Shown here: positions 8,621 through 64,000 of the stretch, one piece after another
How the letters are laid out: the number at the start of each line of letters is the position of its first letter
Position numbering within the stretch: the stretch's first letter is position 1
Virus record (IMG/VR): IMGVR_UViG_3300005826_000294
Coordinates: 124,001 to 188,000 of that record
Strand: one strand, 5' to 3'
DNA length: 64,000 bases
The notes under the pieces: model-generated
What the model was told of the DNA's origin: nothing
Databases searched by the model: none
Seen by the model: the letters and a program-made list of their open reading frames with translations, nothing else
Translations under genes and position numbers: made by a program

Positions 8621-8962
8621 TCACTCGAAGGGTGTATATTTTATATCATCAAAATCCATATCAACAATTTGAGAGTATTGGGAAGATTCTCTTTCTTGTT
8701 TAAGCATATCTAATACATCAAGTTCTTTCTTTTCATTAGGTAATCCTCTACCAAACATGTTTTCAACCATATTATTAAAATCTTCATCTGATGTTTCAAA
8801 AGAATTATCTCTTGCGTCTCTAACTTGTTGAACTCCCTCTGGATTTACAAAAATAGCATTATGTTCCGCTATATCTCTTAACATTTCAAATTGTTCTTTT
8901 TTATCCAAAAATATTTGAGTTTGATACCATAGAAGTTGAGCATCATTTAATTTTTCAAACAT
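8621..8962 (-). CDS. Tail assembly chaperone, C-terminal (gpT-like) part, probably expressed as a frameshift fusion
   Basis: The frame is open for 24 more codons upstream, to 9034, where it overlaps the slippery end of the upstream chaperone. Confidence 0.7.
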   Translation of the reverse strand: MFEKLNDAQLLWYQTQIFLDKKEQFEMLRDIAEHNAIFVNPEGVQQVRDARDNSFETSDEDFNNMVENMFGRGLPNEKKELDVLDMLKQERESSQYSQIVDMDFDDIKYTPFE

Positions 8963-9030
8963 AGGATCATCAACATGTTTCTGATAAATCTTACAAAGGT
9001 CCCATCGGAGTCTATGTGATGATCCCTGTG

Positions 9031-9468: not shown

Positions 9469-9557
9469 TTTACATACCTCTCCTATTTACCTAAACGGCA
9501 TTTAAACTTAACAAAAATATGGAAATTTCTTTCTTGATTCATTATATTACCGGCAGG

Positions 9558-9583
9558 AAAAAGACCAAGAAATTATCTCGGTC
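9558..9583 (-). terminator. Rho-independent terminator after tube gene 2
   Basis: Minus strand GACCGAGA-TAATT-TCTTGGTC followed by TTTTT. Confidence 0.7.
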
Positions 9584-9590
9584 AATAATT

Positions 9591-10226
9591 TTATTCTGCA
9601 AATACAGCATTAGTAAGATTAGAAACATCCATAGAGCCTCTATAACCTGCTCCTGGAGTTGCCCCACCAGATCCAGAATCAGTTGCAGTCTCTCTACCAA
9701 AAGTATCAGTTTGAGGCTGAATACCACGAGAGCCACCAATTACTGCTGAGTTCTGTGTGCTTCCAAGATTTGTTCTAATATCTTCAATTAAAATTTGAGC
9801 ATCTTCCTGAATAATGAAATTATCTGCTTGATATTTTGGAGAATATCGTGAAAACCAACAATTTTCAAGAGTATGAACCACAGCTCCATCAGTATCACCA
9901 GCAGTTCGATCAATAATTTGAATATCAAAAGGAATTAATTGAGATTTAATATTAATAAAACCTCTTTTAAAAGCCTCTGTAAGTCTAAGTCGATCAAAAA
10001 CAACTCTTGTAATATTTGCTTCATATTCTGTTGCTTTATTTGGTACAATTTCCAGAATTCCATCAAGACCAACTTCTTTAACTCTCTCAAGTCCTCTGTT
10101 TTGCGTAATGTTAATACTTTGAATAGCACCAACAGCCTCATTATCTACTTTAATAAGTATTTGGGTAGAAAGTCCCGTGCTAATGTTGCTGTTTAAATTT
10201 GATCCTGTAAGTGGATAGGAAACCAT
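9591..10226 (-). CDS. Tail tube protein (paralog 2)
   Basis: 211 aa, after the sheath, followed by a terminator; clearly paralogous to 10964..11566. Confidence 0.75.
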   Translation of the reverse strand: MVSYPLTGSNLNSNISTGLSTQILIKVDNEAVGAIQSINITQNRGLERVKEVGLDGILEIVPNKATEYEANITRVVFDRLRLTEAFKRGFINIKSQLIPFDIQIIDRTAGDTDGAVVHTLENCWFSRYSPKYQADNFIIQEDAQILIEDIRTNLGSTQNSAVIGGSRGIQPQTDTFGRETATDSGSGGATPGAGYRGSMDVSNLTNAVFAE

Positions 10227-10227
10227 A

Positions 10228-10977
10228 TTATTCCTCCATAAATATTTTATATTTTTTTCTCTTCCTATCTAAAAAATTGGCCTCGCAATCTTCATATAAC
10301 CAGTCCATTATTTTTATTACTTGCTTTCCGCCGAATGAAATTCTAAAACAATTTCCATGTTTATGAGAAACTTTCATTCCTCCAGTTAAATTAACATGAT
10401 GTTTTATTTTATTTCTACACCATTCCAATATATATTTGGATCCAGAATATATTTCAAAACTTAAAGGATTTCTACAACATAAACTTCCATCGCCATCAAA
10501 ATATCCTCTAATATAATGTCTATCAAAACGAACCGGCATATTTTCTGGAGGTTGTATAACTAAAGATTTACAAGAACCTATATTAAATTTTCTTTTTAAA
10601 TCATCTCTAATTATATCCGATCTGAACTTAATATAACAAGAATTATTTTTCTTAATTACCTTACTAGAAACTTCCACAAATTCTTTAAATTTTTCTAAAT
10701 GATTGTAGTCTATTAAATGTAAATTTATTGATATTTGATTACCAAAAATACAACCATCTGCTCCTAAAAACCCTGCCCAATAGCAACTATTTTTATTAAA
10801 ACTAGAAAATACATTATCATTTATAGATATTTTCCTTTTAGGACCAGTCTTTCTTCTTTCAATATTATTTTTTTTTAATTTATTAAAAATAGTAGTTTCA
10901 CTATATCCTATTTTATTTCCAATTTCTTTTAAAGTAAGTCCTTTATTATATAATTCAATAATATTATATGTTTTCAA
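10228..10977 (-). CDS. Free-standing LAGLIDADG homing endonuclease with N-terminal HTH
   Basis: Motifs YWAGFLGADG and YIRGYFDGDG. Confidence 0.85.
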   Translation of the reverse strand: MKTYNIIELYNKGLTLKEIGNKIGYSETTIFNKLKKNNIERRKTGPKRKISINDNVFSSFNKNSCYWAGFLGADGCIFGNQISINLHLIDYNHLEKFKEFVEVSSKVIKKNNSCYIKFRSDIIRDDLKRKFNIGSCKSLVIQPPENMPVRFDRHYIRGYFDGDGSLCCRNPLSFEIYSGSKYILEWCRNKIKHHVNLTGGMKVSHKHGNCFRISFGGKQVIKIMDWLYEDCEANFLDRKRKKYKIFMEE

Positions 10978-11566
10978 GAGGATTACCTATATTTAATTTC
11001 TCATATCTTCCTATCCTTCCATTTGTATCTGTTGCTCTTTCTATTGTATCGTGTTCATATCCAATGCCTCTATATCCACCTGTTGCTGCACTGGTACTAT
11101 TTCTTGTAGTGGTTATATATTCGCACCATAATTGAGATGTTTCTAGAACAATAAAATTTTCGGCACGAAATTGAGGGTTATATTGTCTAAACCAACAACT
11201 ATTAAAAACATGAATAATAGCATCTCCAGAATATTTTAATTCTGTTTTATCAATAATATAAATATCAAAAGGAACTCTTTGTGATTGTATATTTATAAAT
11301 CCTCTAGCAAATGATTCTGGAAGTCTCATTCCATCAAAAACAATCCTATCTACACTAAGTTCTATTTTGGTTGCTCCTTTTGGATGTATTTCTACAATTC
11401 CATCTGTTCCAATTTCTTCCCAACGATGAAGTTCTCTGTTTTGGATTATAGCTAATCTTTGAATAGCACCAACAGTAGTGTTATTTACTTTAATAGTAAT
11501 TTGAGTTGATAAACTACTATTAATACGATTTTCTATTAAACTTCCACTAGATGGATAATTTGTCAT
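10964..11566 (-). CDS. Tail tube protein (paralog 1)
   Basis: 200 aa; STQITIKVNNTTVGAIQ...RIVFD...RGFINIQSQRVPFDI aligns with paralog 2. Confidence 0.7.
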   Translation of the reverse strand: MTNYPSSGSLIENRINSSLSTQITIKVNNTTVGAIQRLAIIQNRELHRWEEIGTDGIVEIHPKGATKIELSVDRIVFDGMRLPESFARGFINIQSQRVPFDIYIIDKTELKYSGDAIIHVFNSCWFRQYNPQFRAENFIVLETSQLWCEYITTTRNSTSAATGGYRGIGYEHDTIERATDTNGRIGRYEKLNIGNPLENI

Positions 11567-13046
11567 TATACTCCAAGAACCTATTATATTTTCTATCTAA
11601 ATAAATATTTGAATTTCCGTATAACCAATTTAAAATGTTTATAGTATATTTTCCTTTAAACTCTACACAATATGTATTAGAATTTCTTTTTGTAATTGAT
11701 GGGTTTCCACATTTGATAGATTTTATTTGATTATAAACCCATGTTAAAAAATCTTTAGATCCGGAGCATATAAATAAACGAGGAACTTTATTCCATCCAA
11801 CACTTCCATCGCCATCTACATATCCGCGAATAAAATGTCTAATCATATTTGTAGGTAAATTAGGAGGTTTAAGAATTAATGTTTTATTTCTAACTATATT
11901 AAAATTAATTAATAAACTTTGCACCAAATCTAAAGAATTAAATTGAATAACGCAAGATTTTGTTATTTTTCCAAAAGATTTTCTATCTCTTTGCTTTATT
12001 TCCGCATTGCTATTTAAAAAATCTTTTATTTTAAATAGATGAGTTCTGTCTTTATGTGAAAGTTCTATACTTAAATGATATTTATCAACCCATCCATCTG
12101 CAGATATAAAACCTGCCCAATAACAACTATATTCATTTATATCTATAAAATTATTATTTAAAACTCTTTTTGTAGTTTTCCTGACCCCAAGTTTTTTAAA
12201 TTTTCCAAGTAAAACCCATTTAGAAATATTATATTTTTTAGATAAATCTTCTAAACTATCTCCACCTAAATATTCATTTGAAATTGCTTTATAATCTAAA
12301 TCAATATTCTTATATTCACAATATTTTTTATATTTACGATCAAGTTTTATAGTTGAATCTTTATATAACCAATCAAATATTTTTATAGAATTTTTATTTT
12401 TTACATCAATACGAAAGGATTTTTTTCCATAAATATGATCTTTATTTATTAATCCAAAATACTGAAGTTTGTTAGAAATCCAATAAATTATATCTCTTGA
12501 TCCACTAACAATATTAAAATTACAGGTTCCTCCATAACATCCAATATGCCCATCGCCATCAAAATAACCACGAATATAATGAGATAATAAATTTTCAGGT
12601 ATTTGTGGTGGTTGTAAAGTTAATGATTTTCTGGGGACAATATTAAAATTATTATTTAATGAAAAGAACATCTGCTTTGAACATACTTGAATATAACAAT
12701 CTCTATGACCGATAGATATTTTATTTGTTGTTCCAACACATTCTTTAAATTTTTCTAAATGATTAATATCTTTAATATTTAAATGTAAAGATATTCTATA
12801 ATCACCCTTCCCAACAAAAACATTTCCATCGGCGGCAATAAATCCAGCCCAATAACAACTTTCAGGAGTAAAAGTGTCAAAAAGAGGATAGTTGTATTTA
12901 GAAGAACGAGAAATTAAGATATTATATTTTTTAAGATTATACCATATTGTAGAATATGGTATGTTTTCAATTTTAGATATTTCTAATATGCTATGATTAT
13001 TTGCTAAGTTCCTAAGTCGCTCTTCATCTATACAACTATCTCTCAA
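11547..13046 (-). CDS. Tandem-duplicated LAGLIDADG endonuclease (two HTH plus double-motif units)
   Basis: Four motifs: YWAGFIAADG, YIRGYFDGDG, YWAGFISADG, FIRGYVDGDG. Confidence 0.85.
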   Translation of the reverse strand: MRDSCIDEERLRNLANNHSILEISKIENIPYSTIWYNLKKYNILISRSSKYNYPLFDTFTPESCYWAGFIAADGNVFVGKGDYRISLHLNIKDINHLEKFKECVGTTNKISIGHRDCYIQVCSKQMFFSLNNNFNIVPRKSLTLQPPQIPENLLSHYIRGYFDGDGHIGCYGGTCNFNIVSGSRDIIYWISNKLQYFGLINKDHIYGKKSFRIDVKNKNSIKIFDWLYKDSTIKLDRKYKKYCEYKNIDLDYKAISNEYLGGDSLEDLSKKYNISKWVLLGKFKKLGVRKTTKRVLNNNFIDINEYSCYWAGFISADGWVDKYHLSIELSHKDRTHLFKIKDFLNSNAEIKQRDRKSFGKITKSCVIQFNSLDLVQSLLINFNIVRNKTLILKPPNLPTNMIRHFIRGYVDGDGSVGWNKVPRLFICSGSKDFLTWVYNQIKSIKCGNPSITKRNSNTYCVEFKGKYTINILNWLYGNSNIYLDRKYNRFLEYNDKLSI

Positions 13047-13064
13047 TTTGACTCCAAAAAAATT

Positions 13065-15611
13065 TTAGAACAATCCTACACTTATGTCTATGAAAATCCA
13101 ATTGGCTGGATAGTTAGGCTCTACCTCAACAACAATATTATATTGTCTTGGTTCAACATCATCTCTGGATACTGATAGATTTCTATAATCAGTAATAAGA
13201 CCTTTAGAAACAAAAGCATTTAGTAGTTTTATTGCTTTTTGAGTTAATGATGGAATTAGAGTTTCATCACTAGGTTGCCCAATAAAAGATCTAAAACTAC
13301 GACGCATTGTTCTTGCTAATTGATCACGGATAAAGATAATAGAGATTTCCTCTTCTTCTGGGGCACCGCTTTGAGTAGTAGTTTTACCATGTTGAACTCT
13401 TCCACCACCAGTAACTGGCTGAATAACGGTAATTCCAGCGTCACCAAGTTTATTGAGAACTGTTTGCTTATATACCTTATCATTTAAAATAGTAAAACCT
13501 GTAAGTATCTTAAATGTAAGAGGCATTGCGATATTTGGTTCTCCTGCTAACCAACCGCCCGCGGCTGCAGCAATATAATATCCTGGAATTGTAGTTCGAG
13601 TTCCATTTATAACTCTTATAATTTCATCCGGATAAAAATAAACTACACGAAATGTATCACCAAAATTAGTAGATACTCCATAGTCCGCAAGATCTTCAAT
13701 ATTTCCATCCAAAATCTCTTCTGGATCATCACCTTGAATACCTTCTAAAATACCAATATCTTCAACAGCCGCAAGTTCGGTTCCAATAACATTATCAGTT
13801 GAAAGACCTTGAAGTGCTCCTGTTAATAAAACACGCTCTCTCTTATAATAGGTAGAAGACATACGCTCGCAATGAACTCTAAATGCTTGCTGAATTGCCG
13901 AGAATGTTTGAGTTGGAAGAGGAACAAGAATTTGAACATCTTGTGTTTCCAAAACATCAAGAATACTTGCCCAATTAGCATCATAAAAATCAGCATCATT
14001 TTGATCAATATAACTAACTCTTAAACCTTTCTTCAAAGCAAGTGCTAAATCGGTTGTAAATAGGATTCTCTGTGATTCATTTCCAGGTAATAATAATTGC
14101 CATTTAACATTACTTGCCGAAATAAATGATCCGGAAGTTCTTGTAATTTTAACTGTATTAGGATCTACAACCTCAGAAATAGAGTATCTACCATCATTAA
14201 CTGTTCCTGTATAGAAAATATCAATTTCTTTACTTTGGGTTATAGCTTGTGAAGTAAAAATTGCAGTTTCACTATAAAATGTTGCAGTTGTTCCGACACC
14301 AATAGGAGTAATTGTCGCATCATTAGCACTTTGTTCAATTTGATCATCAGAAACAACTGTATAACTATATGAATAACCACTTTGACCTGGATCCATAAAT
14401 TCCTGCATCAATAGAGTATCTACACCAGTTTGCTCATAAGCAGAAAAGGCGGCTGTAATATCTGGATCATAGAAAGTTATTTTATTAGGAAAAATCTGAT
14501 CTTCTGTTCCATCAGTATTTAGAATAAATAAATTAACTGTTGTATCACCATCTGGTTTTCCAGGATAATCAATAAAGAAAATCAAATCATCAGCATTAGC
14601 ACTTCCAGTTGCCCCTCCAATACCAGTAAGAGAATTATAGGCCGGAAGAACAATATCAGAGGTTCTTCTTGGAAGAGGTGGTTTGGCTTGAACTGCTAAA
14701 ACAGAAGTTGCTCCATTTTCAAAAGCCATTTGAGCACCGAGTGAAAGAGTATTTTCAGTGCTTGGAGTTCCATATGTAGCAAATAATTTTCCAGGATCTG
14801 TAAAAAGCTTAGGATCTTCTACATCATTAGAAGCAATATATCGTGCTTCAAGCTTATCCATACTTTGAAGAACTTTACTATCTACCTCAATAGTAAATTT
14901 ATCACCAACAGCAAAAGGCTGAGCTGGAGATGGGTTGTTATAAATAGCAAACGATAAAACACCATTATCAACAACATTTCCATCACTTATCCAAGTGTAA
15001 GGTTGTCCATATCCATCGGAAAGTTGTCCAGAAACAGAACCTCTTACAATAAATGTAGCAGTTTCTCTAATTGGATTGCCAGAACCATCTTTTAGAACAC
15101 TAGTACATCTTATAGTCCAGGTTTCTGCTGTAGCATTTGTGTCTGATAAAGTTGGAGTTGATAAGTATCCATCCCCAATATTTGTAGAAGCAGTACTATA
15201 TAGTTTTCCACCCTTATCAATAATACTAGCACTCTGCATTTCAATTTTACCAGTAGCAACTTCAAGTTTAGCATCATATTGAGATGAAAAACTTGTTCCA
15301 TCAATAGTTCCTTCTAAAACTCTAAGTGGCGACCCATTTAGAAGAAGTGTAGTTCTATTTGTGACGATAGGATAATTTGCTAAACGAAAAAATCTTCCAT
15401 AACCATCAGAGGTTGCGGTGAAAGTAGGATTGAAACCATCTTCTCCATTTCCTTCTGCTGATTCTATAACTGTTTCTTCTCTTCGGCCTTCTCCAATAAC
15501 ACTAAGAATACGAAGACCCCCTGGTATAGAAAGTGCTCTTTGTAGAGTCCTTATTCTTGAAAATGTATCAGGTTGACTATAACCGACAATTCCTGGAATA
15601 TTTATTCCCAT
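13065..15611 (-). CDS. Contractile tail sheath protein
   Basis: 848 aa; C-terminal 'ISIIFIRDQLARTMRRSF...FIGQP...YNIVVEVEPNYPANWIFIDISV' is a typical sheath terminus; upstream of the tube genes. Confidence 0.85.
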   Translation of the reverse strand: MGINIPGIVGYSQPDTFSRIRTLQRALSIPGGLRILSVIGEGRREETVIESAEGNGEDGFNPTFTATSDGYGRFFRLANYPIVTNRTTLLLNGSPLRVLEGTIDGTSFSSQYDAKLEVATGKIEMQSASIIDKGGKLYSTASTNIGDGYLSTPTLSDTNATAETWTIRCTSVLKDGSGNPIRETATFIVRGSVSGQLSDGYGQPYTWISDGNVVDNGVLSFAIYNNPSPAQPFAVGDKFTIEVDSKVLQSMDKLEARYIASNDVEDPKLFTDPGKLFATYGTPSTENTLSLGAQMAFENGATSVLAVQAKPPLPRRTSDIVLPAYNSLTGIGGATGSANADDLIFFIDYPGKPDGDTTVNLFILNTDGTEDQIFPNKITFYDPDITAAFSAYEQTGVDTLLMQEFMDPGQSGYSYSYTVVSDDQIEQSANDATITPIGVGTTATFYSETAIFTSQAITQSKEIDIFYTGTVNDGRYSISEVVDPNTVKITRTSGSFISASNVKWQLLLPGNESQRILFTTDLALALKKGLRVSYIDQNDADFYDANWASILDVLETQDVQILVPLPTQTFSAIQQAFRVHCERMSSTYYKRERVLLTGALQGLSTDNVIGTELAAVEDIGILEGIQGDDPEEILDGNIEDLADYGVSTNFGDTFRVVYFYPDEIIRVINGTRTTIPGYYIAAAAGGWLAGEPNIAMPLTFKILTGFTILNDKVYKQTVLNKLGDAGITVIQPVTGGGRVQHGKTTTQSGAPEEEEISIIFIRDQLARTMRRSFRSFIGQPSDETLIPSLTQKAIKLLNAFVSKGLITDYRNLSVSRDDVEPRQYNIVVEVEPNYPANWIFIDISVGLF

Positions 15612-53955: not shown

Positions 53956-54389
53956 TATTCTTCCTTATCTGATGCTATAATTGGTATATCAGAATCTACA
54001 TCTATTGATTTACTTTCTATATCAAGTTGTTTTAGATATTCTTCATCTTCATTCATAACCAAATCTTTTACCTCTTCATCAATATCACCTACTTCTATTA
54101 CTATAGATGATTTTCTTCTTTGCGGAAAAGTAATTGCTGATGGATCAGCCATCTCTTTTAGAGGTAATTCTGGTTCTTTAATACGATTAACTTTCATTAA
54201 ACATCTTCCAAGATATTTTGATATAGAACCATTTTCTTCAGAACTTAATATATCTTTAACGGTTACGCGACTTTTCTTAGCAAGCAAATTTCTAGCCTTA
54301 CCTGCAGGGATTTTAACCCGAAGGTCGCCAAGATTAATGTCGCGTCCCGTTATATTTTTTAGGATATATTCAGATCCAATATTTTTCAT
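53955..54389 (-). CDS. Hypothetical protein
   Basis: 144 aa, TAATG-coupled on both sides. Confidence 0.55.
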   Translation of the reverse strand: MKNIGSEYILKNITGRDINLGDLRVKIPAGKARNLLAKKSRVTVKDILSSEENGSISKYLGRCLMKVNRIKEPELPLKEMADPSAITFPQRRKSSIVIEVGDIDEEVKDLVMNEDEEYLKQLDIESKSIDVDSDIPIIASDKEE

Positions 54390-54631
54390 TACTCCTCATT
54401 CATGGGTTCTTCTAACACTACAACATTCTCTGCCTGAGGGCCAGTGTTATTTGTCCCAAGAGTAAAAGAAACCTTTTGTCCAGCGGTTAAGGTCTTAAAA
54501 GCACCAGGCTCCGCTACAATATTAGTATAATGGACAAATAAATCCTTTCCTCCATCTTCAGGCTTACAAAACCCAAAACCTAAATTGTTATTAAACCATA
54601 TCACTTCACCCTTCATTACTTGATCTGTCAT
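54389..54631 (-). CDS. csp: Cold-shock domain RNA chaperone
   Basis: 'GEVIWFN...GFGF...DLFVHYTNI...FKTL..GQKVSF...GPQAENV' with RNP1 and RNP2. Confidence 0.92.
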   Translation of the reverse strand: MTDQVMKGEVIWFNNNLGFGFCKPEDGGKDLFVHYTNIVAEPGAFKTLTAGQKVSFTLGTNNTGPQAENVVVLEEPMNEE

Positions 54632-55932: not shown

Positions 55933-56157
55933 TTACTCTCCTTTGGTAAATTCTTTATTAATTGTTAAATCACTATGAATATCTAATAAAGCCTGTACTT
56001 GTAATATTGCCGCCTTAGACATATCTTCTTTTTCACTATCCGGAGCGAGAGCAATTGCTCTATCCCATTTATCAAAAAGATTTTGTAAATCTCTATCTGC
56101 TCCTATTCTTTTAGCATAATCCAACAATCCTTGTCGGACTTGTTTCTCAGTCTTCAT
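55933..56157 (-). CDS. Hypothetical helical protein
   Basis: 74 aa with an SD. Confidence 0.5.
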   Translation of the reverse strand: MKTEKQVRQGLLDYAKRIGADRDLQNLFDKWDRAIALAPDSEKEDMSKAAILQVQALLDIHSDLTINKEFTKGE

Positions 56158-56167
56158 TTATTACTCC

Positions 56168-56458
56168 TTAATAACCAGGCCAGAAATAATCATCATCAAA
56201 ATTTTTTCTTTTTACATGGGGACATGAATCCTCATATATTCCCCAAAGACGGGAAATTTCATTATCTTGTAAATCATTATTCATATATAAGGAATCTTCA
56301 ACAGTCATGAAAGCAGCGACAACATTTTTTAACCAGTTCTCCTGCTCGGGGGTAGGTTCTTCCGTGCTTCCATATTTCACTTGTTCTAATGTTCCTCGGG
56401 ACATTATATGTCCACCAGTATTATATGTTATTCCATCTGAGCGTTTTATGAAACTCAT
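56168..56458 (-). CDS. Hypothetical protein
   Basis: 96 aa, TAATG-coupled. Confidence 0.5.
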   Translation of the reverse strand: MSFIKRSDGITYNTGGHIMSRGTLEQVKYGSTEEPTPEQENWLKNVVAAFMTVEDSLYMNNDLQDNEISRLWGIYEDSCPHVKRKNFDDDYFWPGY

Positions 56459-56736
56459 TATTTTGCCCAGGCTTCAACTCGCACCGTGCTAGCTCCTCCA
56501 ACATAACGGAACCACACCTTTGATTCTACTCTATTATCAAATACTAATCCTGCAGAAGCATCACTTGGATTTAAATTTCCATGAACAATGTCCCCATCAA
56601 ATGAATACTCAACAATATTTGCTCCTGTATTTAAAAAAGAAAATCCTTGTGATAAGAATTCAAAATTTACTTGAGGGGCGGATGGAAAAACCGCTACATC
56701 TACAGTTACTTCATCAAAATAATTCCATTTAGACAT
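56458..56736 (-). CDS. Small beta-sandwich protein, possible capsid decoration
   Basis: 92 aa, first gene after the putative late promoter. Confidence 0.45.
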   Translation of the reverse strand: MSKWNYFDEVTVDVAVFPSAPQVNFEFLSQGFSFLNTGANIVEYSFDGDIVHGNLNPSDASAGLVFDNRVESKVWFRYVGGASTVRVEAWAK

Positions 56737-56770
56737 ATCAAAGCTCCATTAATCTATAATAATGATCCTA

Positions 56771-56786
56771 TATTGATAGATTTTTT
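56771..56786 (-). promoter_or_regulatory. Putative late promoter AAAAAATCTATCAATA
   Basis: 15/16 match to the other two copies; intergenic. Confidence 0.6.
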
Positions 56787-56804
56787 CTTTAATTTTTATT
56801 AATT

Positions 56805-57671
56805 CTATGGTGTTGTTACGTTTATTGTAGCCCCAGAGGCTCCTATATTACCACTGGCAAGATAATTTAAAAACATATTAATTGTTCCATTTGATCCATT
56901 ATATGCTGTGTTCGAAGCACCAACATCAATAGTACTTATATTAAGATTTATAAAACCTGCTCCTCCTGCCCCATGCCAAACTCCAATTAAACCTGTTAAT
57001 GTTCCCAACTGGACAATATGATCTACTCTTCCAACAACACTAGAAGTTCCATAATTTCCAACACCAACAGCATTATTTGCTTGTAAATATAAATCTCCTA
57101 CTTTAACGTGCATGTGCCCACCAGCAATAACATCACATCCAACACCAACACGTTCAGTGAAAATAGAATTTACATTAGCTAAAATTACTGCTGGGGCTAC
57201 TACAGCACCAGTATCAAAATTAAATACTCCAACACCTACTGTTCCAGTCTGTACAATTTTATCAGCATATAACCAATTTGTCCCGCCATTTCCTGTTAAA
57301 GCTTTATAAACTGCTGTTTTTTGAGCAGAAATAATAGAATGAAATGTAACAGATGAATTATCTCCAGTAAATTCTACTACTCCATTATAATAACCTCCAC
57401 CACTATCTTGAATTGTAGCACTTGGAGCATATACACTACGATTTTCAGGAACAATAATACTTTCATTATAAATTCCCGAATCTAAACAAACTACTACAAT
57501 ACCAGCACTAGAAGCAGATAAAGCCGCTCCAAATGTAAGAAATGCTTTTTCAATAGTTTTCCCATCATTAGAATCGCTTCCATGCTTTCCAACCCATAAT
57601 ATATTTTGATTATCTATTAAAGGAGCAAATGAACTGCTTATACTCCCAGAAATTCCTAAAAAACTGCTCAT
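56805..57671 (-). CDS. Pectin-lyase-like beta-helix protein
   Basis: 'WVGKHGSDSNDGKTIEKAFLT...A...GIYNESI' start motif of beta-helix enzymes. Confidence 0.6.
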   Translation of the reverse strand: MSSFLGISGSISSSFAPLIDNQNILWVGKHGSDSNDGKTIEKAFLTFGAALSASSAGIVVVCLDSGIYNESIIVPENRSVYAPSATIQDSGGGYYNGVVEFTGDNSSVTFHSIISAQKTAVYKALTGNGGTNWLYADKIVQTGTVGVGVFNFDTGAVVAPAVILANVNSIFTERVGVGCDVIAGGHMHVKVGDLYLQANNAVGVGNYGTSSVVGRVDHIVQLGTLTGLIGVWHGAGGAGFINLNISTIDVGASNTAYNGSNGTINMFLNYLASGNIGASGATINVTTP

Positions 57672-57680
57672 CTTATCCTC

Positions 57681-58043
57681 CTATTTATAGACATCAGCAT
57701 AACCTTCTTTTAATAAGTGGTCATTAAGTAATATCTCTTCTCCATCTATAGTAAAATACAAATCAATTAACCATCTTCCATATTTATCAGGTTTATAAGT
57801 AATTGCTCGTAAATATTGAGATTTATTAAGACATTCTTCTACATACGCTTTAGCTTTTAAGCCGGCTTCTTTTTCTATTCCACGCACTTCTGGCGTATTT
57901 ATTCTTGCTAAACGAAAATTCATTTCAGTAGATATAGTCTGTAAAATATGAAAACCTATATCTATATCTTTATATAGTCTTAGACGAACAGTATCGCCAT
58001 CTACCACTCTTACAAGTTCTGCTCTATAGTTATATTCAGTCAT
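57681..58043 (-). CDS. Thermonuclease (SNase-like)
   Basis: 'RVVDGDT', 'RLARINTPE', 'DKYGRWL', 'LLKEGYA'. Confidence 0.88.
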   Translation of the reverse strand: MTEYNYRAELVRVVDGDTVRLRLYKDIDIGFHILQTISTEMNFRLARINTPEVRGIEKEAGLKAKAYVEECLNKSQYLRAITYKPDKYGRWLIDLYFTIDGEEILLNDHLLKEGYADVYK

Positions 58044-58116
58044 AATTAAACTCCATATTATATTTAATAATATTAATATATAGATACACTACTCCTATGA
58101 TAAAAATAATTTTTAA

Positions 58117-59139
58117 TTATTGTTTTGTGAATATATAGACGGGTTCTAATTTGGAGGTTCCTGCGGTTTTATTTAGATGACTACGAATGGTCTTCAGGTG
58201 GATGGTCTCTTTATAAACAAATTTATCATTTGCCATTTCAAACATTTTAGGAAAATTAATTACATTTAATGCGAAATACTTATTCGGCTTTAACATTCTA
58301 TAAACATTATCTAATGTATTTTTCCAATATATATTATAAAAATAATCTTCTCCTTTATTATATGCTTGTGAATCATCTGAACTATAAACTTCCTGATTAA
58401 AATATGGAGGAGAAGACATAGCAAAATCTATTGTATTTTCTCCTAGAAATGTATTTTCCGAAACTCCATTTATTAGTTTATAATTTTTAAAATTAAAATG
58501 TTTAGCCATAGCTTCAAGTTCAAAAGAAGTCAAAGGATCTACCCCAACATATTGTCTATTACAGGACATTGCTCCTAATAATCTTCCTCCAAATCCCATA
58601 CTATAATCATATACAATATCATTTTTTTTAGAATATCTTTCATATAAAAATTTAGCAATTGTAGGCTTAAACATACTTATCATAGGGATTTTTCTTGCTG
58701 ATCTAAATCCTTGGACTATCTGTCTAAAACTAATTTGAAATGCTTCAATATCATTCTCATGTTTTTTCTTATACCAATCTATACCAAGTCTATTTTGAAT
58801 TACACTTTTTAAAACATTATCATCTTGGAATAACTCTATAATATTTTTCTTTTTAGGTTCAGTTGATCCAAAAAATGATTTACAAAAATACTTACATATA
58901 AAAGTCCCAACACTACTATTATTAAATAAAACATCTTCTTCTACATTACATTTAAAATCAACAAGTCTCTTCCATTCACTATCTACCTTTTTTATATCAT
59001 CTGGATACATAAATCCTATGTTTCTAAAATATTGGAAAATAGGTTCTATTAATTCTATTCTTTCTTCTTTACTTAATGATTCAACATACTTTTTTGTTAA
59101 TTTATTTTCATTAATTGTAATTACGTCATTAAAATTCAT
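58117..59139 (-). CDS. Amino (N4-C/N6-A) DNA methyltransferase
   Basis: Motif I 'YDYSMGFGGRLLG' followed by motif IV 'SSPPYF'. Confidence 0.85.
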   Translation of the reverse strand: MNFNDVITINENKLTKKYVESLSKEERIELIEPIFQYFRNIGFMYPDDIKKVDSEWKRLVDFKCNVEEDVLFNNSSVGTFICKYFCKSFFGSTEPKKKNIIELFQDDNVLKSVIQNRLGIDWYKKKHENDIEAFQISFRQIVQGFRSARKIPMISMFKPTIAKFLYERYSKKNDIVYDYSMGFGGRLLGAMSCNRQYVGVDPLTSFELEAMAKHFNFKNYKLINGVSENTFLGENTIDFAMSSPPYFNQEVYSSDDSQAYNKGEDYFYNIYWKNTLDNVYRMLKPNKYFALNVINFPKMFEMANDKFVYKETIHLKTIRSHLNKTAGTSKLEPVYIFTKQ

Positions 59140-59900
59140 TTTACCTTCCCTGAATATTCTATATGATTATTTAACCCTGGAAATTTTTCTTTATATCTCA
59201 ACAAACTCTTATTTGATGAAAATCCAAGCATTACATATTCTATATTAAGATTATTTGCCTTTTCATATAAAGAAAAATCTATTAATTCCGATAGAATTGG
59301 GTTTTTCTTATATAAAGCTTTTCCAACAATATATGAACTATATCTTCCTCTATTAGATAATGTTCCAAGAGCTACTAACTCATTACCATTATAACAAAAA
59401 GAATTAATACATTCATTATGAAAATTATTCATATAAAAATATAGATTTTTTCCACTATTATCTCTAAAATATTTATCAGAATAATTCTCTCTCCATTGTT
59501 CTATAAATATCTTTACATCATTAATATCTCTATAATAATCTAACACTTCTATATCTAATTTGTCAATTCTATTTAATCTATTTCTTAAACCACGATATTT
59601 TTTACCAGAAGGATATAATGTTTTCGATAAATCCAAAAATCCTGAATCTCCTTTTGACTTTAAAACCTTAAAAGCATTTTTTAAAACTACAACATCATCA
59701 AAAGAGAAATAATGAAAATTAAATGGAACATACTCTTTTAACCATATAATATCACTATTCTTTAATTCATCAAAAATTACAATATTTCTTCTTTTACCTA
59801 CCATCCAAGTAGCATATCGGTCATATTCGCAAATATCTCTTGCCATCTTTCCTAATAAGCATTTCCAAGAATACTTATCAATATAACTAATCTTCATCAT
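59136..59900 (-). CDS. Stand-alone DUF2156 / LPG_synthase_C-like GNAT (aminoacyl-tRNA-dependent transferase fold)
   Basis: 'GKKYRGLRNRLNR', 'NG.LVA', 'GKA', 'YVMLG...SLLRYKEKF' match my recollection of the family pattern; no membrane domain. Confidence 0.65.
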   Translation of the reverse strand: MMKISYIDKYSWKCLLGKMARDICEYDRYATWMVGKRRNIVIFDELKNSDIIWLKEYVPFNFHYFSFDDVVVLKNAFKVLKSKGDSGFLDLSKTLYPSGKKYRGLRNRLNRIDKLDIEVLDYYRDINDVKIFIEQWRENYSDKYFRDNSGKNLYFYMNNFHNECINSFCYNGNELVALGTLSNRGRYSSYIVGKALYKKNPILSELIDFSLYEKANNLNIEYVMLGFSSNKSLLRYKEKFPGLNNHIEYSGKVK

Positions 59901-61195
59901 ATTCCTCTATCATTTGTTTTATAAAATTTTCTACATTATCTTTATATGAAATAATTTTATAGTTAATATTATTCTTTTTATAATACTCTATTTTTTCATT
60001 TTCTCCACTATCATATGGATGTTTTCTATTATTCTTCATTCCATCAATTTCTAACCATATTTCCTTTCCATTCTTTAATTCAATAAAAAAATCGCAGGTC
60101 CATTGCCTGCTCTCACAAACCAAACTCTCATATTTATATCTTTTTATATGTTTTGATTTAAATAAAATATCTCCAGCGGTTTTTTCAATTGAAGATAAAT
60201 AAATATTACCATCATCTCCTTTAAAATATCCCCTTCCATGAAATTGATTAATTGTATTATATTTTGGGTCAATTTTTTTCATTATATCTTCCCACGCAAT
60301 ATAATTAAATTTTTTCTTTATTATATAACAACTATATGGAAACTTATCTTTTGAAGCATTTCTTATGCTCCAATATTCTAAACATTTAATATCATTATTA
60401 TTTTCTTTATACCATTTAATAAGAGAATTTATTATATTTTGTCGAGATATGTTTGAAATAATTCCAGCTTCTAATAGTGCCTTGGACCAAGAACCAAAAA
60501 TCTTTTTAAATGTAGGACTACAATACCTTATATTTGATAATTCATAATATTCTTTTTGAGTAGGGATTCTACCAAGTTTTTTATAAACTTGTTTTAAATC
60601 ATCAATAATTTCTTTTTTTGTTTTATTTCTCACTTGATTTGGTTTAAACCCAGCAACTAAAAGAGATTTTGATAAAGAACCAAATGCTCTCTTATAAGCA
60701 TTAATACTATATTTACTACCATTCTTTAAACTTAAATCTTCTTTCTTTGGAGTTCTACCTAATTTCTCGTACATTTCTTTAAGATTTTTTATTAATTTAT
60801 TATTAGATATTTTATAACAAGCATTCCCTACATTTTCTTTAAAAACCTCTTTCATCCATTTATTCCAACTTTGTATTCTTATATAAGAAGAAGTTGAATA
60901 ATTTCCATATTTATTATATTCTTTTTTACTGGGAGGTTTGTTAATAATACTATAAACTCTTTTTAAATCATCAATTAAACTTTCCTTTGATATTTTTAAA
61001 GAATTTGTTCTTTTTATAAAATCCTACTTTATTACACCATTCCGACCATAACATTCTATCTGTATAAGGATCAGAAGAATATTTACCATATCTAATATAT
61101 TCTTCTTTTGTGGGAATTTTTCCGAGTTTATTTACAACATATCTTAAATTTTCCAATAATTCTTCATAACTTAACTTTTTCATTTCTTTCCCCAA
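59887..61195 (-). pseudogene. Homing-endonuclease-associated-repeat protein with PD-(D/E)XK-like nuclease, split by a +1 frameshift at 61018-61021
   Basis: ORFs 60971..61195 and 59887..60855 join into one repeat series if one T of GGA TTT T is skipped. Confidence 0.65.
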
Positions 61196-61923
61196 CGATG
61201 TTCATATCCAATAACAGGACAATCTCCAATCCAATCCAAAAAATCTAAATTATCAAATACCAAGATATAATAATCTCCACTCCTTTTCTTTACATTTACC
61301 TTAAAACCTAAATTTTTAAGCATAATACATAATTTATTATTATCTTCAAAAGAAAACCCACAAGTCGAAATCTTAACTTTATTCTCAAAATATCCGTCCC
61401 CCAAATACCAATGTAAAGCCGTTTCTTTTGTTAAATTAAACTCTGGAACTATTTTGGTTCCATTAATATACCATTTATTATATATTTCGGTCCAAGATAT
61501 ATTTGATGTTGTTCTCGTCCTAAATTGCTTTTTTCCTCCATTTCTCTCTTTTAGGATAAAACATTTAACAGGAATATCTAATTTATTATATAAATATCTT
61601 CCATAATGAAAATTTGCCGTGGAATGAGAAAAACAAGCATTACTTTTATATTGTCCAGATAAATATAAACAACCATCTCCTAATAATTCTCCATTTATAA
61701 TCTCAATACATCTTTTAGAAATTATAATAGGTTTATCCTGAGGACGACCAGATATTTTTCCTACATCTATTCCAGCACAATTAATAGCATTTCTCCAACT
61801 ACCAAAATGTCTTTTATATGTTGATGAAGAGGGTCCATTCAATTTATCAATATAACTTTGAGATATATTATCTAACGAAAAAGATCTTAAATAATTAATC
61901 AATTCTTCTTTTGTATATTTCAT
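61180..61923 (-). CDS. HE-associated repeat plus LAGLIDADG_2-type endonuclease
   Basis: 'GELLGDGCL' and 'HWYLGDGYF' motifs. Confidence 0.8.
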   Translation of the reverse strand: MKYTKEELINYLRSFSLDNISQSYIDKLNGPSSSTYKRHFGSWRNAINCAGIDVGKISGRPQDKPIIISKRCIEIINGELLGDGCLYLSGQYKSNACFSHSTANFHYGRYLYNKLDIPVKCFILKERNGGKKQFRTRTTSNISWTEIYNKWYINGTKIVPEFNLTKETALHWYLGDGYFENKVKISTCGFSFEDNNKLCIMLKNLGFKVNVKKRSGDYYILVFDNLDFLDWIGDCPVIGYEHRWGKK

Positions 61924-62590
61924 TTAAATACTCTAAAAATTTCCTTTTATTATATGTAGCGTTTTTCTTAAAATTATCTTCTTTTTTTAACCATTGATGG
62001 TTTTTTGGATTAAAAGCCGCTTTAATATGATATACATTATTAAAATCAAAAGCGGATAAAGGAAAAATATGATCTATATTATAATTCTCAATATCCTTAG
62101 GAAAAGGTTTTAAATATTCAATAATAGCATAATAATCTATTCCATACTCATCCGATTTTGTTTTTCCATTAGAATATGTTTTAAAAGCATAATATAACCT
62201 TTGTCTTAGTTTTAATATAATAGAAAATATAGGATCATCTTTCCTTTTTTTCTTATTATAACAATTCCTACACATCTTTTTAGAACATATATTTCTATAT
62301 TTGCCACAAATATAACAATATCCTTTATTATTATAACAATTTTTACATATCTGGGTTTTTCTTATATGTATCTCTTTTTCATTACCACAAATAGAACATA
62401 TCTTTTTCTTATATGTATATGTTCTTTTATAACAAACATCACATAATTTACTTGTATGAAGTTCCTTTATTTTTCCACATTCTATACATTCTTTTTTTTT
62501 TCTCTTATATTGTTTATTATAACATTTTTTACATAACATAGGGGATTTTTTTACAATCTTTTGGCCCCCGCAAACGGAACATTTTTTCAT
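61895..62590 (-). CDS. CxxC-repeat protein with C-terminal HNH endonuclease
   Basis: 'YNIDHIFPLSAFDF...PKNHQWLKKEDNFKK'. Confidence 0.75.
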   Translation of the reverse strand: MKKCSVCGGQKIVKKSPMLCKKCYNKQYKRKKKECIECGKIKELHTSKLCDVCYKRTYTYKKKICSICGNEKEIHIRKTQICKNCYNNKGYCYICGKYRNICSKKMCRNCYNKKKRKDDPIFSIILKLRQRLYYAFKTYSNGKTKSDEYGIDYYAIIEYLKPFPKDIENYNIDHIFPLSAFDFNNVYHIKAAFNPKNHQWLKKEDNFKKNATYNKRKFLEYLNEIYKRRID

Positions 62591-62612
62591 GAAAGCACCT
62601 TTCAGGTTAGAG

Positions 62613-62637
62613 TCGTCGCGACGAAAATTGTCGACAA
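62613..62637. promoter_or_regulatory. Two adjacent perfect palindromes TCGTCGCGACGA and TTGTCGACAA
   Basis: Read directly; CpG-rich island in an AT-rich intergenic gap. Function unknown. Confidence 0.4.
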
Positions 62638-62658
62638 AAAAATGAATAAAAATTCTAA

Positions 62659-63591
62659 CTATTCAAAATTATTCAAATTTTTTATTATTGTGTCTCTAAT
62701 GTTCGTATCTCTATAAGATATTATAATATAATTGAACTTATTATCATTATAATACTTTATTTTTTCATTATTATCATATGGGTATTTTCTGCTATTTTTC
62801 ATTCCATCTACTTCAATCCAAATCCCATCTGTATAAAAATCACAAGTCCAAGACCTATTATTACAAACTCGCTTTTCATATTCGTAATTTTTTATTAATC
62901 CTTTATTCTTTAAATCAAATAAAATATCTCCCGTTTTCTTTTCTATGGAAGATAAATATTTATTGCCATCATTACCCTTATGAATATGTCTTCCATAGAA
63001 AATATCTTTGGTTTTATAATTTTTATCAATTTTCTTCATAATATCTTCCCATAAAATATTATCAAATTTCTTTTTTATAGTATTACAACTATAAGGAAAC
63101 TTACCATTTTCTTTTGCCTTCCTTATACTCCAATACTCTAAACATCTAATATTATTATTTTCTCTATACCATTTTTTTAGAGCATTTATAATATCCTGTT
63201 TATCTATATTTTTGGCATTTATGACAGGAATTTCAGCCTCTAACAGTAGTTTAGTCCAAGACCCAAATATTTTTTTAATTGTTAAAGAAGTATATCTAAT
63301 ATTAGAATATGTAAAATATTCTTCCTGAGATGGAGTTTTACCTATTTTATTATATACATTTATTAAATCATCAATAATATTTTTTTTAGATTTATTTCTC
63401 ACCTGATTTGGCTTCATACCAGATGATAAAAGAGCAATCTCTAATGATCCAAATGCTCTTTTATAAGCATTAATACTATACTTACTACCATTCTTTAAAC
63501 TTAAATCTTCTTTCTTTGGTGTCCTTCCTAAACTATATTTTAAACTAATTAAATTATTAATTAAATCATCATCACTTATTTTATTAGACAC
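62659..63591 (-). CDS. HE-associated-repeat protein with PD-(D/E)XK-like nuclease
   Basis: Paralog of 59887..60855 ('WTCDF...IW.E.DGMKN'). Confidence 0.75.
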   Translation of the reverse strand: MSNKISDDDLINNLISLKYSLGRTPKKEDLSLKNGSKYSINAYKRAFGSLEIALLSSGMKPNQVRNKSKKNIIDDLINVYNKIGKTPSQEEYFTYSNIRYTSLTIKKIFGSWTKLLLEAEIPVINAKNIDKQDIINALKKWYRENNNIRCLEYWSIRKAKENGKFPYSCNTIKKKFDNILWEDIMKKIDKNYKTKDIFYGRHIHKGNDGNKYLSSIEKKTGDILFDLKNKGLIKNYEYEKRVCNNRSWTCDFYTDGIWIEVDGMKNSRKYPYDNNEKIKYYNDNKFNYIIISYRDTNIRDTIIKNLNNFE

Positions 63592-63655: not shown

Positions 63656-64000
63656 TTAGCCTACGGCTACAGACTTACGACCAACAGCAACACCTCTTGG
63701 GTTAACAACACCAATTCCTATGATTTCCGATACAACCCATCCAAGCTTTAACTGTTTAGGTTCATCGGCTGGTAGTACCTCGATGTCCTGACGGACAGGC
63801 ATTACACCTACGAACTCTGGATCGGCAGCACCAAAAATAGTTCCAGGTGGAACAATCTTGGAAACGATGATATCCGCACCCCAGATATGAGCATATAGCC
63901 CGGTCTGAAGAACTTCTCTCATTGTTACTGGATCTACCTCACCACCAGTAGCGCCCTGACCACCACCAGTAGCCCAATTTAGAATATCATTAAACTCAAT
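63656..64000 (-). CDS. Major capsid protein, C-terminal part (HK97-type), truncated by the window edge
   Basis: Frame open from the edge (IEFNDILNWATGGGQGATGGEVDPVTMREVLQTG...HIWGADIIVSKIVPPG...GWVVSEIIGIGVVNPRGV); followed by a strong terminator. Confidence 0.75.
   Translation of the reverse strand: MEFNDILNWATGGGQGATGGEVDPVTMREVLQTGLYAHIWGADIIVSKIVPPGTIFGAADPEFVGVMPVRQDIEVLPADEPKQLKLGWVVSEIIGIGVVNPRGVAVGRKSVAVG

What the first reader, a model, noticed from the sequence alone, without database searches (positions are those of the whole stretch)
58117..59900. DNA amino-methyltransferase translationally coupled to a stand-alone DUF2156-like aminoacyl-tRNA transferase
Seen: the two genes overlap by ATGA (59136-59139); the GNAT-like protein has no membrane domain. 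Established: DUF2156/LPG_synthase_C domains transfer amino acids from aminoacyl-tRNA (MprF, ErdS), and phage Mu Mom is a GNAT-fold DNA adenine hypermodifier. Inference: this pair may install an aminoacylated DNA base, protecting a genome loaded with nucleases. Alternatively the GNAT modifies proteins (the DGY tag) or lipids.
Basis: partly seen in the sequence, partly recalled or inferred. Interest (0 to 1): 0.7.

Follow-up and report, generated by a model that had tools for sequence, protein, structure and literature searches.

The report
Phage tRNA-dependent transferase paired with methyltransferase
A giant phage carries a soluble enzyme of the kind that moves amino acids off charged tRNA, always next to one family of DNA-type amino-methyltransferase; the pair is a good untested candidate for a new amino-acid-derived DNA modification.

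Summary
Genes 59136-59900(-) (254 aa, "X") and 58117-59139(-) (340 aa methyltransferase) overlap by ATGA, and a Shine-Dalgarno-like GGGAAGG sits inside X.

- **X.** It is soluble. Alone it is sub-threshold for PF09924, but 14 of 15 relatives match. Its model is a tandem GNAT whose nine best structural matches are all aminoacyl-tRNA-dependent transferases (DUF2156, MprF, Sbb17, Fem).
- **Methyltransferase.** It keeps invariant SAM-binding and SSPPY motifs. It matches PF01555 and Type II DNA methyltransferase models, though its core fold is nearest Trm11.
- **Linkage.** It is strong and one-sided. All 20 close and 6 distant X homologues examined lie beside this methyltransferase family, in different phage contexts and once in reversed order. 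The methyltransferase often occurs without X, including in two near-complete relatives.
- **Acceptor.** It is unproven. Phage Mu Mom was recently shown to glycylate DNA adenine from Gly-tRNA, which makes a DNA target plausible. X is not a Mom homologue.

My best reading, at about 0.4, is a two-enzyme, tRNA-dependent DNA base modification module. The rivals are an independent envelope or lipid function, a tRNA-centred pair, or a protein target. I found no description of this module in the literature searched.

The parts
59136..59900 (-). X: soluble 254-aa DUF2156 / LPG_synthase_C-type tandem-GNAT protein, a predicted aminoacyl-tRNA-dependent aminoacyl transferase
58117..59139 (-). 340-aa SAM-dependent amino-methyltransferase. 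Motif I (DYSMGFGGR, residues 178-186) precedes motif IV (SSPPY, residues 242-246). The N-terminal helical domain (about 1-150) is found only in viruses.
59136..59139 (-). ATGA overlap: X stop codon TGA overlaps the methyltransferase start codon ATG
59143..59150 (-). Shine-Dalgarno-like GGGAAGGT, 3 nt (TAAA from the AAGG core) upstream of the methyltransferase ATG, inside the X coding sequence
   Evidence: read
59394..59900 (-). Part of X holding two conserved elements. The first is the basic helix GKKYRGLRNRLNR (residues 99-111; G99, R106 and N110 invariant), which aligns to the acceptor-stem-binding helix region of 2hqy and L-PGS. The second is the invariant loop KYFRDxSGKN (residues 143-152).
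   Evidence: PMC6103681
59887..60855 (-). Context: HNH-repeat homing-endonuclease-like gene that overlaps the X start by 14 nt. It is the first of five such genes lying between the last piece of the major capsid gene and X.
57681..58043 (-). Context: SNase-like nuclease downstream of the methyltransferase. It is not conserved with the pair in related loci.
63656..64000 (-). Context: last piece of the split major capsid protein gene. The X-methyltransferase pair lies downstream of the capsid gene throughout this jumbo-phage clade.

Best explanation
X and the methyltransferase form a conserved two-gene phage module expressed as one translationally coupled unit. Shown by computation: X is a soluble member of the DUF2156 / MprF-synthase-domain class of tandem-GNAT aminoacyl-tRNA transferases, and it keeps the basic helix that in this class binds the tRNA acceptor stem. 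The partner is a catalytically intact SPPY-type exocyclic-amine methyltransferase whose sequence relatives are N4C/N6A DNA methyltransferases. X is never found without this methyltransferase family, but the methyltransferase is often found without X. Inferred: the methyltransferase recognises the phage's own double-stranded DNA and flips and methylates a cytosine N4 or adenine N6. X takes an aminoacyl group from a charged host or phage tRNA and transfers it to a base at or beside that site. This is the chemistry now demonstrated for phage Mu Mom. It would turn simple methylation into a bulkier amino-acid-derived mark that blocks a wider range of host nucleases. The one-sided dependence suggests X needs the methyltransferase, either as its DNA-targeting and base-flipping partner or for its methylated product. 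The amino acid, the base and the order of the two steps are unknown.
For: X fold and family. The top nine unbiased structural matches are all aminoacyl-tRNA transferases (Z 12.5-19.1). X is soluble. Methyltransferase: PF01555 above its cut-off. Motifs I and IV are invariant in 25 relatives and kept in all six distant X-linked partners. It matches Type II DNA methyltransferase models, and PDLC03376 aligns contiguously over residues 156-291. It also matches N4C DNA methyltransferase 8s9n. A remote full-length homologue in Vibrio phage 2.058.O is annotated as an N4C methylase and lies among helicase, dCMP deaminase, DHFR and thymidylate synthase genes. Linkage: 20 distinct close loci all have X upstream on the same strand. 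In 16 of them X overlaps or lies within 62 nt of the methyltransferase gene; the other four are separated by inserted ORFs or homing endonucleases. Six of six distant X homologues (E 1e-22 to 1e-25 to the X profile) abut a distant member of the same methyltransferase family. Their contexts differ: tail sheath, PolB/RNR replication module, D5 primase element. In L057 the order is reversed. Some loci add tailoring-type partners, as in known phage hypermodification clusters: a PLP-enzyme domain fused to X' in L062 and a small class-I methyltransferase beside X' in L058. Precedent: Mom transfers glycine from Gly-tRNA(Gly) to N6 of dA in dsDNA (PMC13219725). A 200-nt metatranscriptome contig spans the X/methyltransferase junction (weak evidence, and it may be DNA).
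Against: No result identifies the acceptor. All characterised DUF2156 enzymes aminoacylate lipids, sterols or small molecules, not nucleic acids. X has no detectable similarity to any protein in 50,697 isolated-phage records. It lacks the single-GNAT-plus-HTH-insertion architecture of Mom, and no DNA-binding element was identified in it. The methyltransferase core is structurally nearest tRNA m2G methyltransferases (Trm11 Z 18.6, TrmN 17.4). The methyltransferase occurs without X in 16 of 34 distinct related loci and in two 92-97% complete relatives that lack X anywhere. Within the jumbo-phage clade, X presence follows phylogeny (3 changes on the tree), so part of the linkage there is shared ancestry. 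The complex prediction gave no verdict.
Confidence: 0.4

Rival explanations
1. The two genes have independent functions and are merely co-inherited. The methyltransferase is an ordinary orphan anti-restriction DNA methyltransferase. X aminoacylates a host envelope component, such as phosphatidylglycerol, another lipid or a peptidoglycan precursor, or a small molecule. This could serve superinfection exclusion or envelope remodelling late in infection.
For: The nearest structures are MprF synthase domains, the stand-alone DUF2156 protein 2hqy, the small-molecule enzyme Sbb17 and FemX. The methyltransferase functions without X in many relatives. The complex prediction gave no support for binding (no verdict, so not evidence either way). 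The region is a hotspot for homing endonucleases, whose co-conversion could keep neighbouring genes together.
Against: Adjacency to the same methyltransferase family is kept in six distant lineages with otherwise unrelated neighbours, and with one order swap. That is hard to explain without a functional tie. X was never seen without the methyltransferase. X has no membrane anchor or hydrophobic segment.
Confidence: 0.25
2. The pair is centred on tRNA. The methyltransferase methylates an exocyclic amine of a tRNA (Trm11/TrmN-like m2G, or m6A/m4C). This would mark or protect a phage or host tRNA, which X then uses as its dedicated aminoacyl donor or otherwise handles. The shared substrate would explain the linkage.
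For: The methyltransferase catalytic core is closest to the Trm11, TrmN and Trm14 tRNA m2G methyltransferases. X-class enzymes bind aminoacyl-tRNA. The genome carries 9 tRNA genes, four of them tRNA-Lys(UUU).
Against: Sequence matches are to DNA methyltransferase families (PF01555, 17 PADLOC R-M methyltransferase models, PRK13699, N4C methyltransferase 8s9n) and none to tRNA methyltransferase families. The motif IV variant SPPY is, from general knowledge, typical of N4C DNA methyltransferases. The N-terminal domain is not a THUMP domain and is found only in phage methyltransferases. X-less homologues lie in DNA metabolism modules.
Confidence: 0.12
3. The target is a protein. X adds an amino acid to a protein, in the manner of L/F-transferase or ATE1. 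The target could be the methyltransferase itself or a virion protein encoded nearby. The methyltransferase could in turn methylate a protein amide, as PrmC does.
For: In the jumbo-phage clade the module lies just downstream of the major capsid gene. L/F-transferase and ATE1 appear as weaker structural matches (Z about 10). PrmC is a weaker match to the methyltransferase (Z 14.1).
Against: The distant modules lie in replication or other contexts, not beside capsid genes. DUF2156 and MprF matches clearly outrank the protein transferases. Methyltransferase sequence matches are to DNA methyltransferases.
Confidence: 0.08

Closest known systems
MprF / aaPGS synthase domain and other DUF2156 (PF09924) aminoacyl-tRNA transferases (A-PGS, L-PGS, LpiA, LysX, ErdS, Sbb17/Sba18, structure 2hqy)
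   Same: Tandem GNAT fold over the whole protein (Z 14.6-19.1, TM about 0.7). Profile-level sequence homology. The GKKxxxxRxxxNR basic helix is conserved. Stand-alone soluble members are known (2hqy, Sbb17).
   Different: About 50-70 residues shorter than canonical domains. No flippase or membrane domain and no fused aaRS. Encoded by phages. Obligately linked to a DNA-type methyltransferase. Acceptor unknown.
Phage Mu Mom (tRNA-dependent N6-adenine hypermodification, PMC13219725)
   Same: A phage-encoded GNAT-superfamily enzyme. Charged tRNA is used as acyl donor, which is shown for Mom and only inferred here. The proposed role is protection of phage DNA late in infection.
   Different: Mom is a single GNAT domain with an HTH-like insertion, works as a homodimer and needs no partner. 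X is a tandem GNAT without that insertion, shows no detectable sequence similarity to Mom, and is always paired with a methyltransferase.
Type II N4C/N6A DNA methyltransferases (PF01555, PADLOC MTase_II models; Vibrio phage 2.058.O N4C methylase homologue)
   Same: SAM-binding motif I, SPPY motif IV and downstream motifs. PF01555 score above its cut-off. Full-length remote homologues occur in isolated phages.
   Different: Motif I precedes motif IV, which is permuted relative to the beta-class PF01555 model. It carries a virus-specific helical N-terminal domain. The core fold is nearest Trm11.
Partner-dependent phage DNA-modifying enzymes, for example the regulator-dependent (ParB-dependent) T-dioxygenases (PMC13229309; title and abstract snippet only)
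   Same: The concept is the same: a phage DNA-modifying enzyme that requires a separate DNA-binding partner encoded next to it.
   Different: The chemistry and protein families are unrelated. The dependence is only inferred here from gene distribution.

Membership tests
DUF2156 / LPG_synthase_C (PF09924) aminoacyl-tRNA transferases | Sequence-profile match to the family | tested here: met
   The window protein alone is sub-threshold (15.1 bits against 27.5). However, 14 of 15 relatives match, best E 2.9e-12. The family profile hits 2hqy at E 8e-9 and L-PGS 4v36 at 1.4e-3.
DUF2156 / LPG_synthase_C (PF09924) aminoacyl-tRNA transferases | Tandem GNAT fold | tested here: met
   Model pLDDT 91. Foldseek E about 1e-11 and TM 0.64-0.71 to A-PGS, L-PGS, MprF and Sbb17. 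VIA-align Z 19.1 to 2hqy and 14.7-16.2 to MprF domains, above the acetyl-CoA tandem GNATs (Z 12.2 or less).
DUF2156 / LPG_synthase_C (PF09924) aminoacyl-tRNA transferases | Positively charged helix that binds the tRNA acceptor stem (PMC6103681) | tested here: met
   Helix 100-112 reads GKKYRGLRNRLNR, with G99, R106 and N110 invariant. It aligns to LKGKKFQAKRNHINRF of 2hqy and ISGKKRAGLRAIYNRF of L-PGS. The function of the helix is inferred.
DUF2156 / LPG_synthase_C (PF09924) aminoacyl-tRNA transferases | Use of aminoacyl-tRNA as donor | not testable with these tools
   Needs biochemistry.
MprF proper (bifunctional lipid aminoacylase and flippase) | N-terminal transmembrane flippase domain or membrane anchor | tested here: not met
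   254 aa with no hydrophobic segment: maximum KD19 0.73. The model is globular.
MprF proper (bifunctional lipid aminoacylase and flippase) | Hydrophobic lipid-headgroup pocket opposite the amino-acid pocket | not tested
Mom-type tRNA-dependent DNA adenine modifiers | Sequence homology to Mom | tested here: not met
   tblastn of X against 50,697 GenBank phage records gave no match at E 0.01 or better. I assume, but did not check, that Mu is among those records. No Mom structure appears among the top 50 structural matches.
Mom-type tRNA-dependent DNA adenine modifiers | Single GNAT domain with an HTH-like insertion, homodimer | tested here: not met
   X is a tandem GNAT with no such insertion. 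The Mom architecture is taken from PMC13219725.
Mom-type tRNA-dependent DNA adenine modifiers | DNA base as acyl acceptor | not testable with these tools
   Only the conserved link to a DNA-type methyltransferase speaks for it.
N6/N4 DNA amino-methyltransferases (PF01555 / Type II) | Family profile match above the curated cut-off | tested here: met
   PF01555 at 30.9 bits against 26.7. 17 PADLOC R-M methyltransferase models match, best E 2.6e-10. N4C methyltransferase 8s9n matches at E 0.002 with the family profile.
N6/N4 DNA amino-methyltransferases (PF01555 / Type II) | SAM motif I and (S/D/N)PP(Y/F) motif IV intact | tested here: met
   D178, S180, G182, G184, R186, D201, S242, S243 and Y246 are invariant and P244-P245 nearly invariant in 25 relatives. 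The motifs are kept in all distant X-linked partners.
N6/N4 DNA amino-methyltransferases (PF01555 / Type II) | DNA is the substrate | not testable with these tools
   Supported indirectly by the genomic context of the Vibrio phage homologue.
Trm11 / TrmN / Trm14 tRNA m2G methyltransferases | Catalytic core similarity | tested here: met
   Z 16.2-18.6, slightly above generic class-I methyltransferases at Z 14-16.
Trm11 / TrmN / Trm14 tRNA m2G methyltransferases | THUMP-type RNA-binding N-terminal domain and family sequence match | tested here: not met
   The N-terminal 150 residues are helical and match only phage methyltransferase clusters. No Pfam or NCBIfam tRNA methyltransferase family matched at E 0.1 or better.

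The most novel reading that the evidence does not exclude
A two-component, aminoacyl-tRNA-dependent DNA hypermodification system. A DUF2156-type transferase, a class so far known only for lipids, sterols and small molecules, aminoacylates a DNA base. The base is presented, or first methylated, by a dedicated SPPY methyltransferase. The product would be a DNA base not yet described, for example an N4- or N6-aminoacyl or rearranged derivative, possibly also methylated. The system would be widespread in uncultured jumbo and other phages, and some lineages add PLP-dependent or extra methyltransferase tailoring steps.
Probability: 0.3. Interest if true: 0.85.

Novelty: new variant of a known kind. 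Interest (0 to 1): 0.7.

Why it matters
If the acceptor is DNA, this would be the second tRNA-dependent DNA modification system after Mom, and architecturally independent of it. It would be the first nucleic-acid substrate for the DUF2156/MprF enzyme class. It would also point to a new modified base relevant to restriction and CRISPR evasion, sequencing artefacts and enzymatic DNA labelling. Even if the acceptor is not DNA, an obligate pairing of an aminoacyl-tRNA transferase with one methyltransferase family across divergent phages is undescribed. It is directly testable with two small soluble proteins.

Tried and rejected
- **Complex prediction.** The X plus methyltransferase job returned no verdict (score 0.00). 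It is not evidence for or against binding.
- **PDB sequence search with the close X family alone.** It gave only noise, apart from LpiA at E 1.8. A broader profile was needed.
- **Family libraries.** PHROGs and PADLOC have no family for X. NCBIfam has none either.
- **Wider locus searches.** Pattern-based searches with the distant X alignments failed for lack of conserved stretches. Single-protein scans returned only contigs already held, or nothing.
- **Sequencing runs.** Only two low-depth estuary metatranscriptome assemblies hold the region. No DNA or long-read run was served, so modification signatures could not be sought.
- **Promoter and terminator scan.** Promoter-like sites were no more frequent than in shuffles, and there is no terminator between the two genes.
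- **Other hypermodification routes in the genome.**
  - Thymidylate synthase is present with a full-length, high-scoring match (334 bits), which reads as an ordinary ThyA rather than a hydroxymethylase.
  - There is no TGT/DpdA and no Dam-type methyltransferase.
  - There is no class-II Lys/Asp-type aaRS.
- **Fusion proteins.** Apparent fusions of X or the methyltransferase with extra N-terminal domains turned out to be in-frame homing endonucleases, not functional partners.
- **Whole-genome comparison.** I considered gene-content profiling of X-plus against X-minus genomes and dropped it, because X presence follows phylogeny.
A quick scan of the genome's minus-strand ORFs of at least 80 aa found DGY within 15 residues of a terminus in only two proteins, so no recurring terminal motif was evident. 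I did not pursue it.
Full report
**Setting**

The window is part of a 301,683-bp virus record with 29.9% G+C, estimated 75% complete. The protein database records the window's proteins on a 312,596-bp contig. Almost all long ORFs lie on the minus strand. The target pair lies downstream of the last piece of a split major capsid gene and a run of homing-endonuclease-like genes. Relatives are uncultured phages, with contigs up to about 460 kb.

**The observation**

- X occupies 59136-59900(-) and encodes 254 aa.
- The methyltransferase occupies 58117-59139(-) and encodes 340 aa.
- They share ATGA at 59136-59139. A GGGAAGG ribosome-binding-like site lies inside X just upstream of the methyltransferase start.
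- X also overlaps the upstream HNH-repeat gene by 14 nt.
- No terminator-like site separates the genes, and promoter-like sites are no more frequent than in shuffled sequence.
- X has no hydrophobic segment.

**What X is**

Alone it only grazes PF09924 (E 0.012). The evidence from its relatives and its structure is much stronger.

- Seventeen close relatives were found by word search and 27 clusters by exhaustive profile search at E below 1e-30.
- 14 of 15 aligned members match PF09924, best E 2.9e-12.
- A wider profile hits the DUF2156 structure 2hqy (E 8e-9) and B. licheniformis L-PGS.
- The AlphaFold model (pLDDT 91) is a tandem GNAT.
- In a search of 48,161 PDB representatives that does not lean on Foldseek, the nine best matches are 2hqy, four MprF/aaPGS synthase domains, the streptothricin peptide synthase Sbb17, two FemX structures and FemA (Z 12.5-19.1). 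All rank above the acetyl-CoA tandem GNATs.
- The helix GKKYRGLRNRLNR aligns with the basic helix region of 2hqy and L-PGS. That kind of helix binds the tRNA acceptor stem in this enzyme class (PMC6103681).

X is therefore a soluble member of the aminoacyl-tRNA transferase class. It is not MprF, because it has no membrane domain. It is not a Mom homologue, because it shows no sequence similarity and has a different architecture.

**What the methyltransferase is**

- More than 140 relatives at 47-70% identity conserve the whole length, including motif I and SSPPY.
- It passes PF01555.
- It matches 17 restriction-modification methyltransferase models. One of them aligns contiguously across motifs I to IV.
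- It matches an N4C DNA methyltransferase structure at both motif regions.
- Motif I precedes motif IV, which is permuted relative to the PF01555 model.
- Structurally the core is nearest the tRNA m2G methyltransferases Trm11, TrmN and Trm14 (Z 16-18.6).
- The helical N-terminal domain is found only in phage methyltransferases and is not a THUMP domain.
- Remote full-length homologues exist in Bacteroides DAC phages and Vibrio phages. In the Vibrio phages the gene is annotated as an N4C methylase and lies among replication and nucleotide-metabolism genes.

I read it as a DNA N4C/N6A-type methyltransferase, with a tRNA target as the minority alternative.

**Linkage**

I scanned 52 fetched loci and the window's own genome record with profiles of both proteins.

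| Set | Count | Arrangement |
|---|---|---|
| Close X homologues, distinct loci | 20 | All have the methyltransferase downstream on the same strand |
| of these, overlapping or within 62 nt | 16 | Overlaps of 4-23 nt, or gaps of 9-62 nt |
| of these, separated | 4 | An inserted small ORF or homing endonuclease (209 nt to 5.2 kb) |
| Distant X homologues | 6 | All abut a distant member of the same methyltransferase family |
| Methyltransferase loci without X | 16 of 34 distinct | X absent |

- The six distant X homologues score E 1e-22 to 1e-25 against the close-family profile. They were taken from metagenomes.
- Their surroundings are unrelated to each other: a tail sheath module (L060), a PolB/RNR replication module (L058) and a D5-primase element (L062).
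- In L057 the order is reversed, methyltransferase then X, with a 20-nt overlap.
- All of these partner methyltransferases keep the catalytic motifs.
- Two near-complete relatives, estimated 92% and 97% complete, have no X anywhere.
- On the methyltransferase tree, X-plus loci form one broad group with 3 changes. Within the jumbo-phage clade, part of the linkage is therefore shared ancestry.

The distant lineages are what make a functional tie likely. The dependence is one-sided: X needs the methyltransferase family, and not the reverse.

**Extra partners**

- In L062 the X-like domain is fused to a PLP-dependent enzyme domain.
- In L058 a small class-I methyltransferase abuts X', and two further members of the window's methyltransferase family plus a partial PF01555 gene lie nearby.

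From general knowledge, variable tailoring enzymes around a conserved core are typical of phage DNA hypermodification clusters.

**Precedent**

Mom of phage Mu, long thought to use acetyl-CoA, transfers glycine from Gly-tRNA(Gly) to N6 of adenine in dsDNA. A rearrangement to N6-carbamoylmethyl-adenine follows (PMC13219725). This makes tRNA-dependent DNA acylation an established chemistry. It also shows that aromatic exocyclic amines can be acylated from the aminoacyl ester.

**Mechanism proposed**

Shown by computation:
- The families of both proteins and the intact motifs.
- The coupling signals between the two genes.
- The distribution across loci.

Inferred:
- The methyltransferase binds phage DNA and flips and methylates its target base.
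- X draws an aminoacyl group from charged tRNA and transfers it to a base at or near that site. It uses the methyltransferase either as a targeting partner or for its product.
- The resulting bulky mark broadens protection against host nucleases.

I put this at about 0.4. The rivals are:
- Independent functions, with an envelope, lipid or small-molecule acceptor: 0.25.
- A tRNA-centred pair: 0.12.
- A protein target: 0.08.

**Limits**

- No tool could show the acceptor, the amino acid or a physical complex. The complex job gave no verdict.
- Only low-depth metatranscriptome contigs hold the region.
- The genome also encodes an ordinary-looking thymidylate synthase and a C5 DNA methyltransferase. 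It has no TGT/DpdA and no Lys/Asp-type aaRS.

**Novelty**

Full-text searches found no paper linking DUF2156 or LPG_synthase_C enzymes to phage DNA methyltransferases or phage DNA modification. I rate it a new variant of a known kind, with interest 0.7.

Noticed in passing
window 63656-64000 and beyond (G000 187656-188192, 191884-192111, perhaps 192192-192860): The major capsid protein gene appears split into at least two or three pieces. Three HTH/homing-endonuclease-like ORFs lie between them (G000 188291-189046, 189514-190401, 190774-191712). This suggests endonuclease-bearing introns or insertions in the capsid gene.
   Followed up: partly
window 59887-63591: Five homing-endonuclease-type ORFs lie in a row between the capsid gene piece and X. 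Two are paralogous HNH-repeat proteins (59887-60855 and 62659-63591) that share long identical stretches. The others are a LAGLIDADG_2 protein (61180-61923), a zinc-ribbon/HNH protein (61895-62590) and a short HNH-repeat-like ORF (60971-61195).
   Followed up: partly
L017:6909-9017, L021, L023, L025, L027-L030, L034-L037, L046-L048; L015:6882-8747, L044:6242-8011: In relatives that lack X, a LAGLIDADG plus HTH homing endonuclease is fused in frame to the N-terminus of the methyltransferase, with no stop codon between them. The same kind of fusion precedes X in L015 and L044. It is unclear whether these are translated as fusions or from internal starts.
   Followed up: partly
G000 4636-13695 (outside the window): Nine tRNA genes are clustered here: four tRNA-Lys(UUU), plus Met, Ile(UAU), Asp, Leu(UAA) and one tRNA-like gene for which ARAGORN reports a four-base anticodon, gaaa. 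Lys-tRNA is the donor of lysyl-PG synthases, but the AT-rich codon usage could explain the copies equally well.
   Followed up: no
L062:4399-6696: An X-like DUF2156 domain is fused to a PLP-dependent (PALP) enzyme domain. It lies directly after a divergent member of the same methyltransferase family, in an element with a D5-type primase.
   Followed up: partly
L058:7422-12881: The order here is a small class-I SAM methyltransferase (190 aa), then X', then a 510-aa member of the methyltransferase family, then a 401-aa paralogue four genes on. All of this lies inside a PolB/RNR/clamp-loader replication module. The RNR and other genes there carry inteins.
   Followed up: partly
L020:1097-4126: Two tandem copies of the methyltransferase. 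The first is fused to an N-terminal extension with an HTH.
   Followed up: no
G000 300763-301683: A full-length C5 cytosine DNA methyltransferase (PF00145, 365 bits) lies at the very end of the record, so the phage carries at least two DNA methyltransferases.
   Followed up: no
window 54389-54631 and 57681-58043: A cold-shock-domain-like protein, judged from its translation and from the PF00313 protein at the syntenic position in L001, and a 120-aa SNase-like nuclease lie downstream of the pair. The SNase gene is not conserved next to the pair in relatives.
   Followed up: no
window 56000-61000: Two estuary metatranscriptome assemblies contain short contigs identical to the window, which places this phage in estuarine samples. 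One 200-nt contig (58999-59198) bridges the X/methyltransferase junction. DNA carry-over cannot be excluded.
   Followed up: partly
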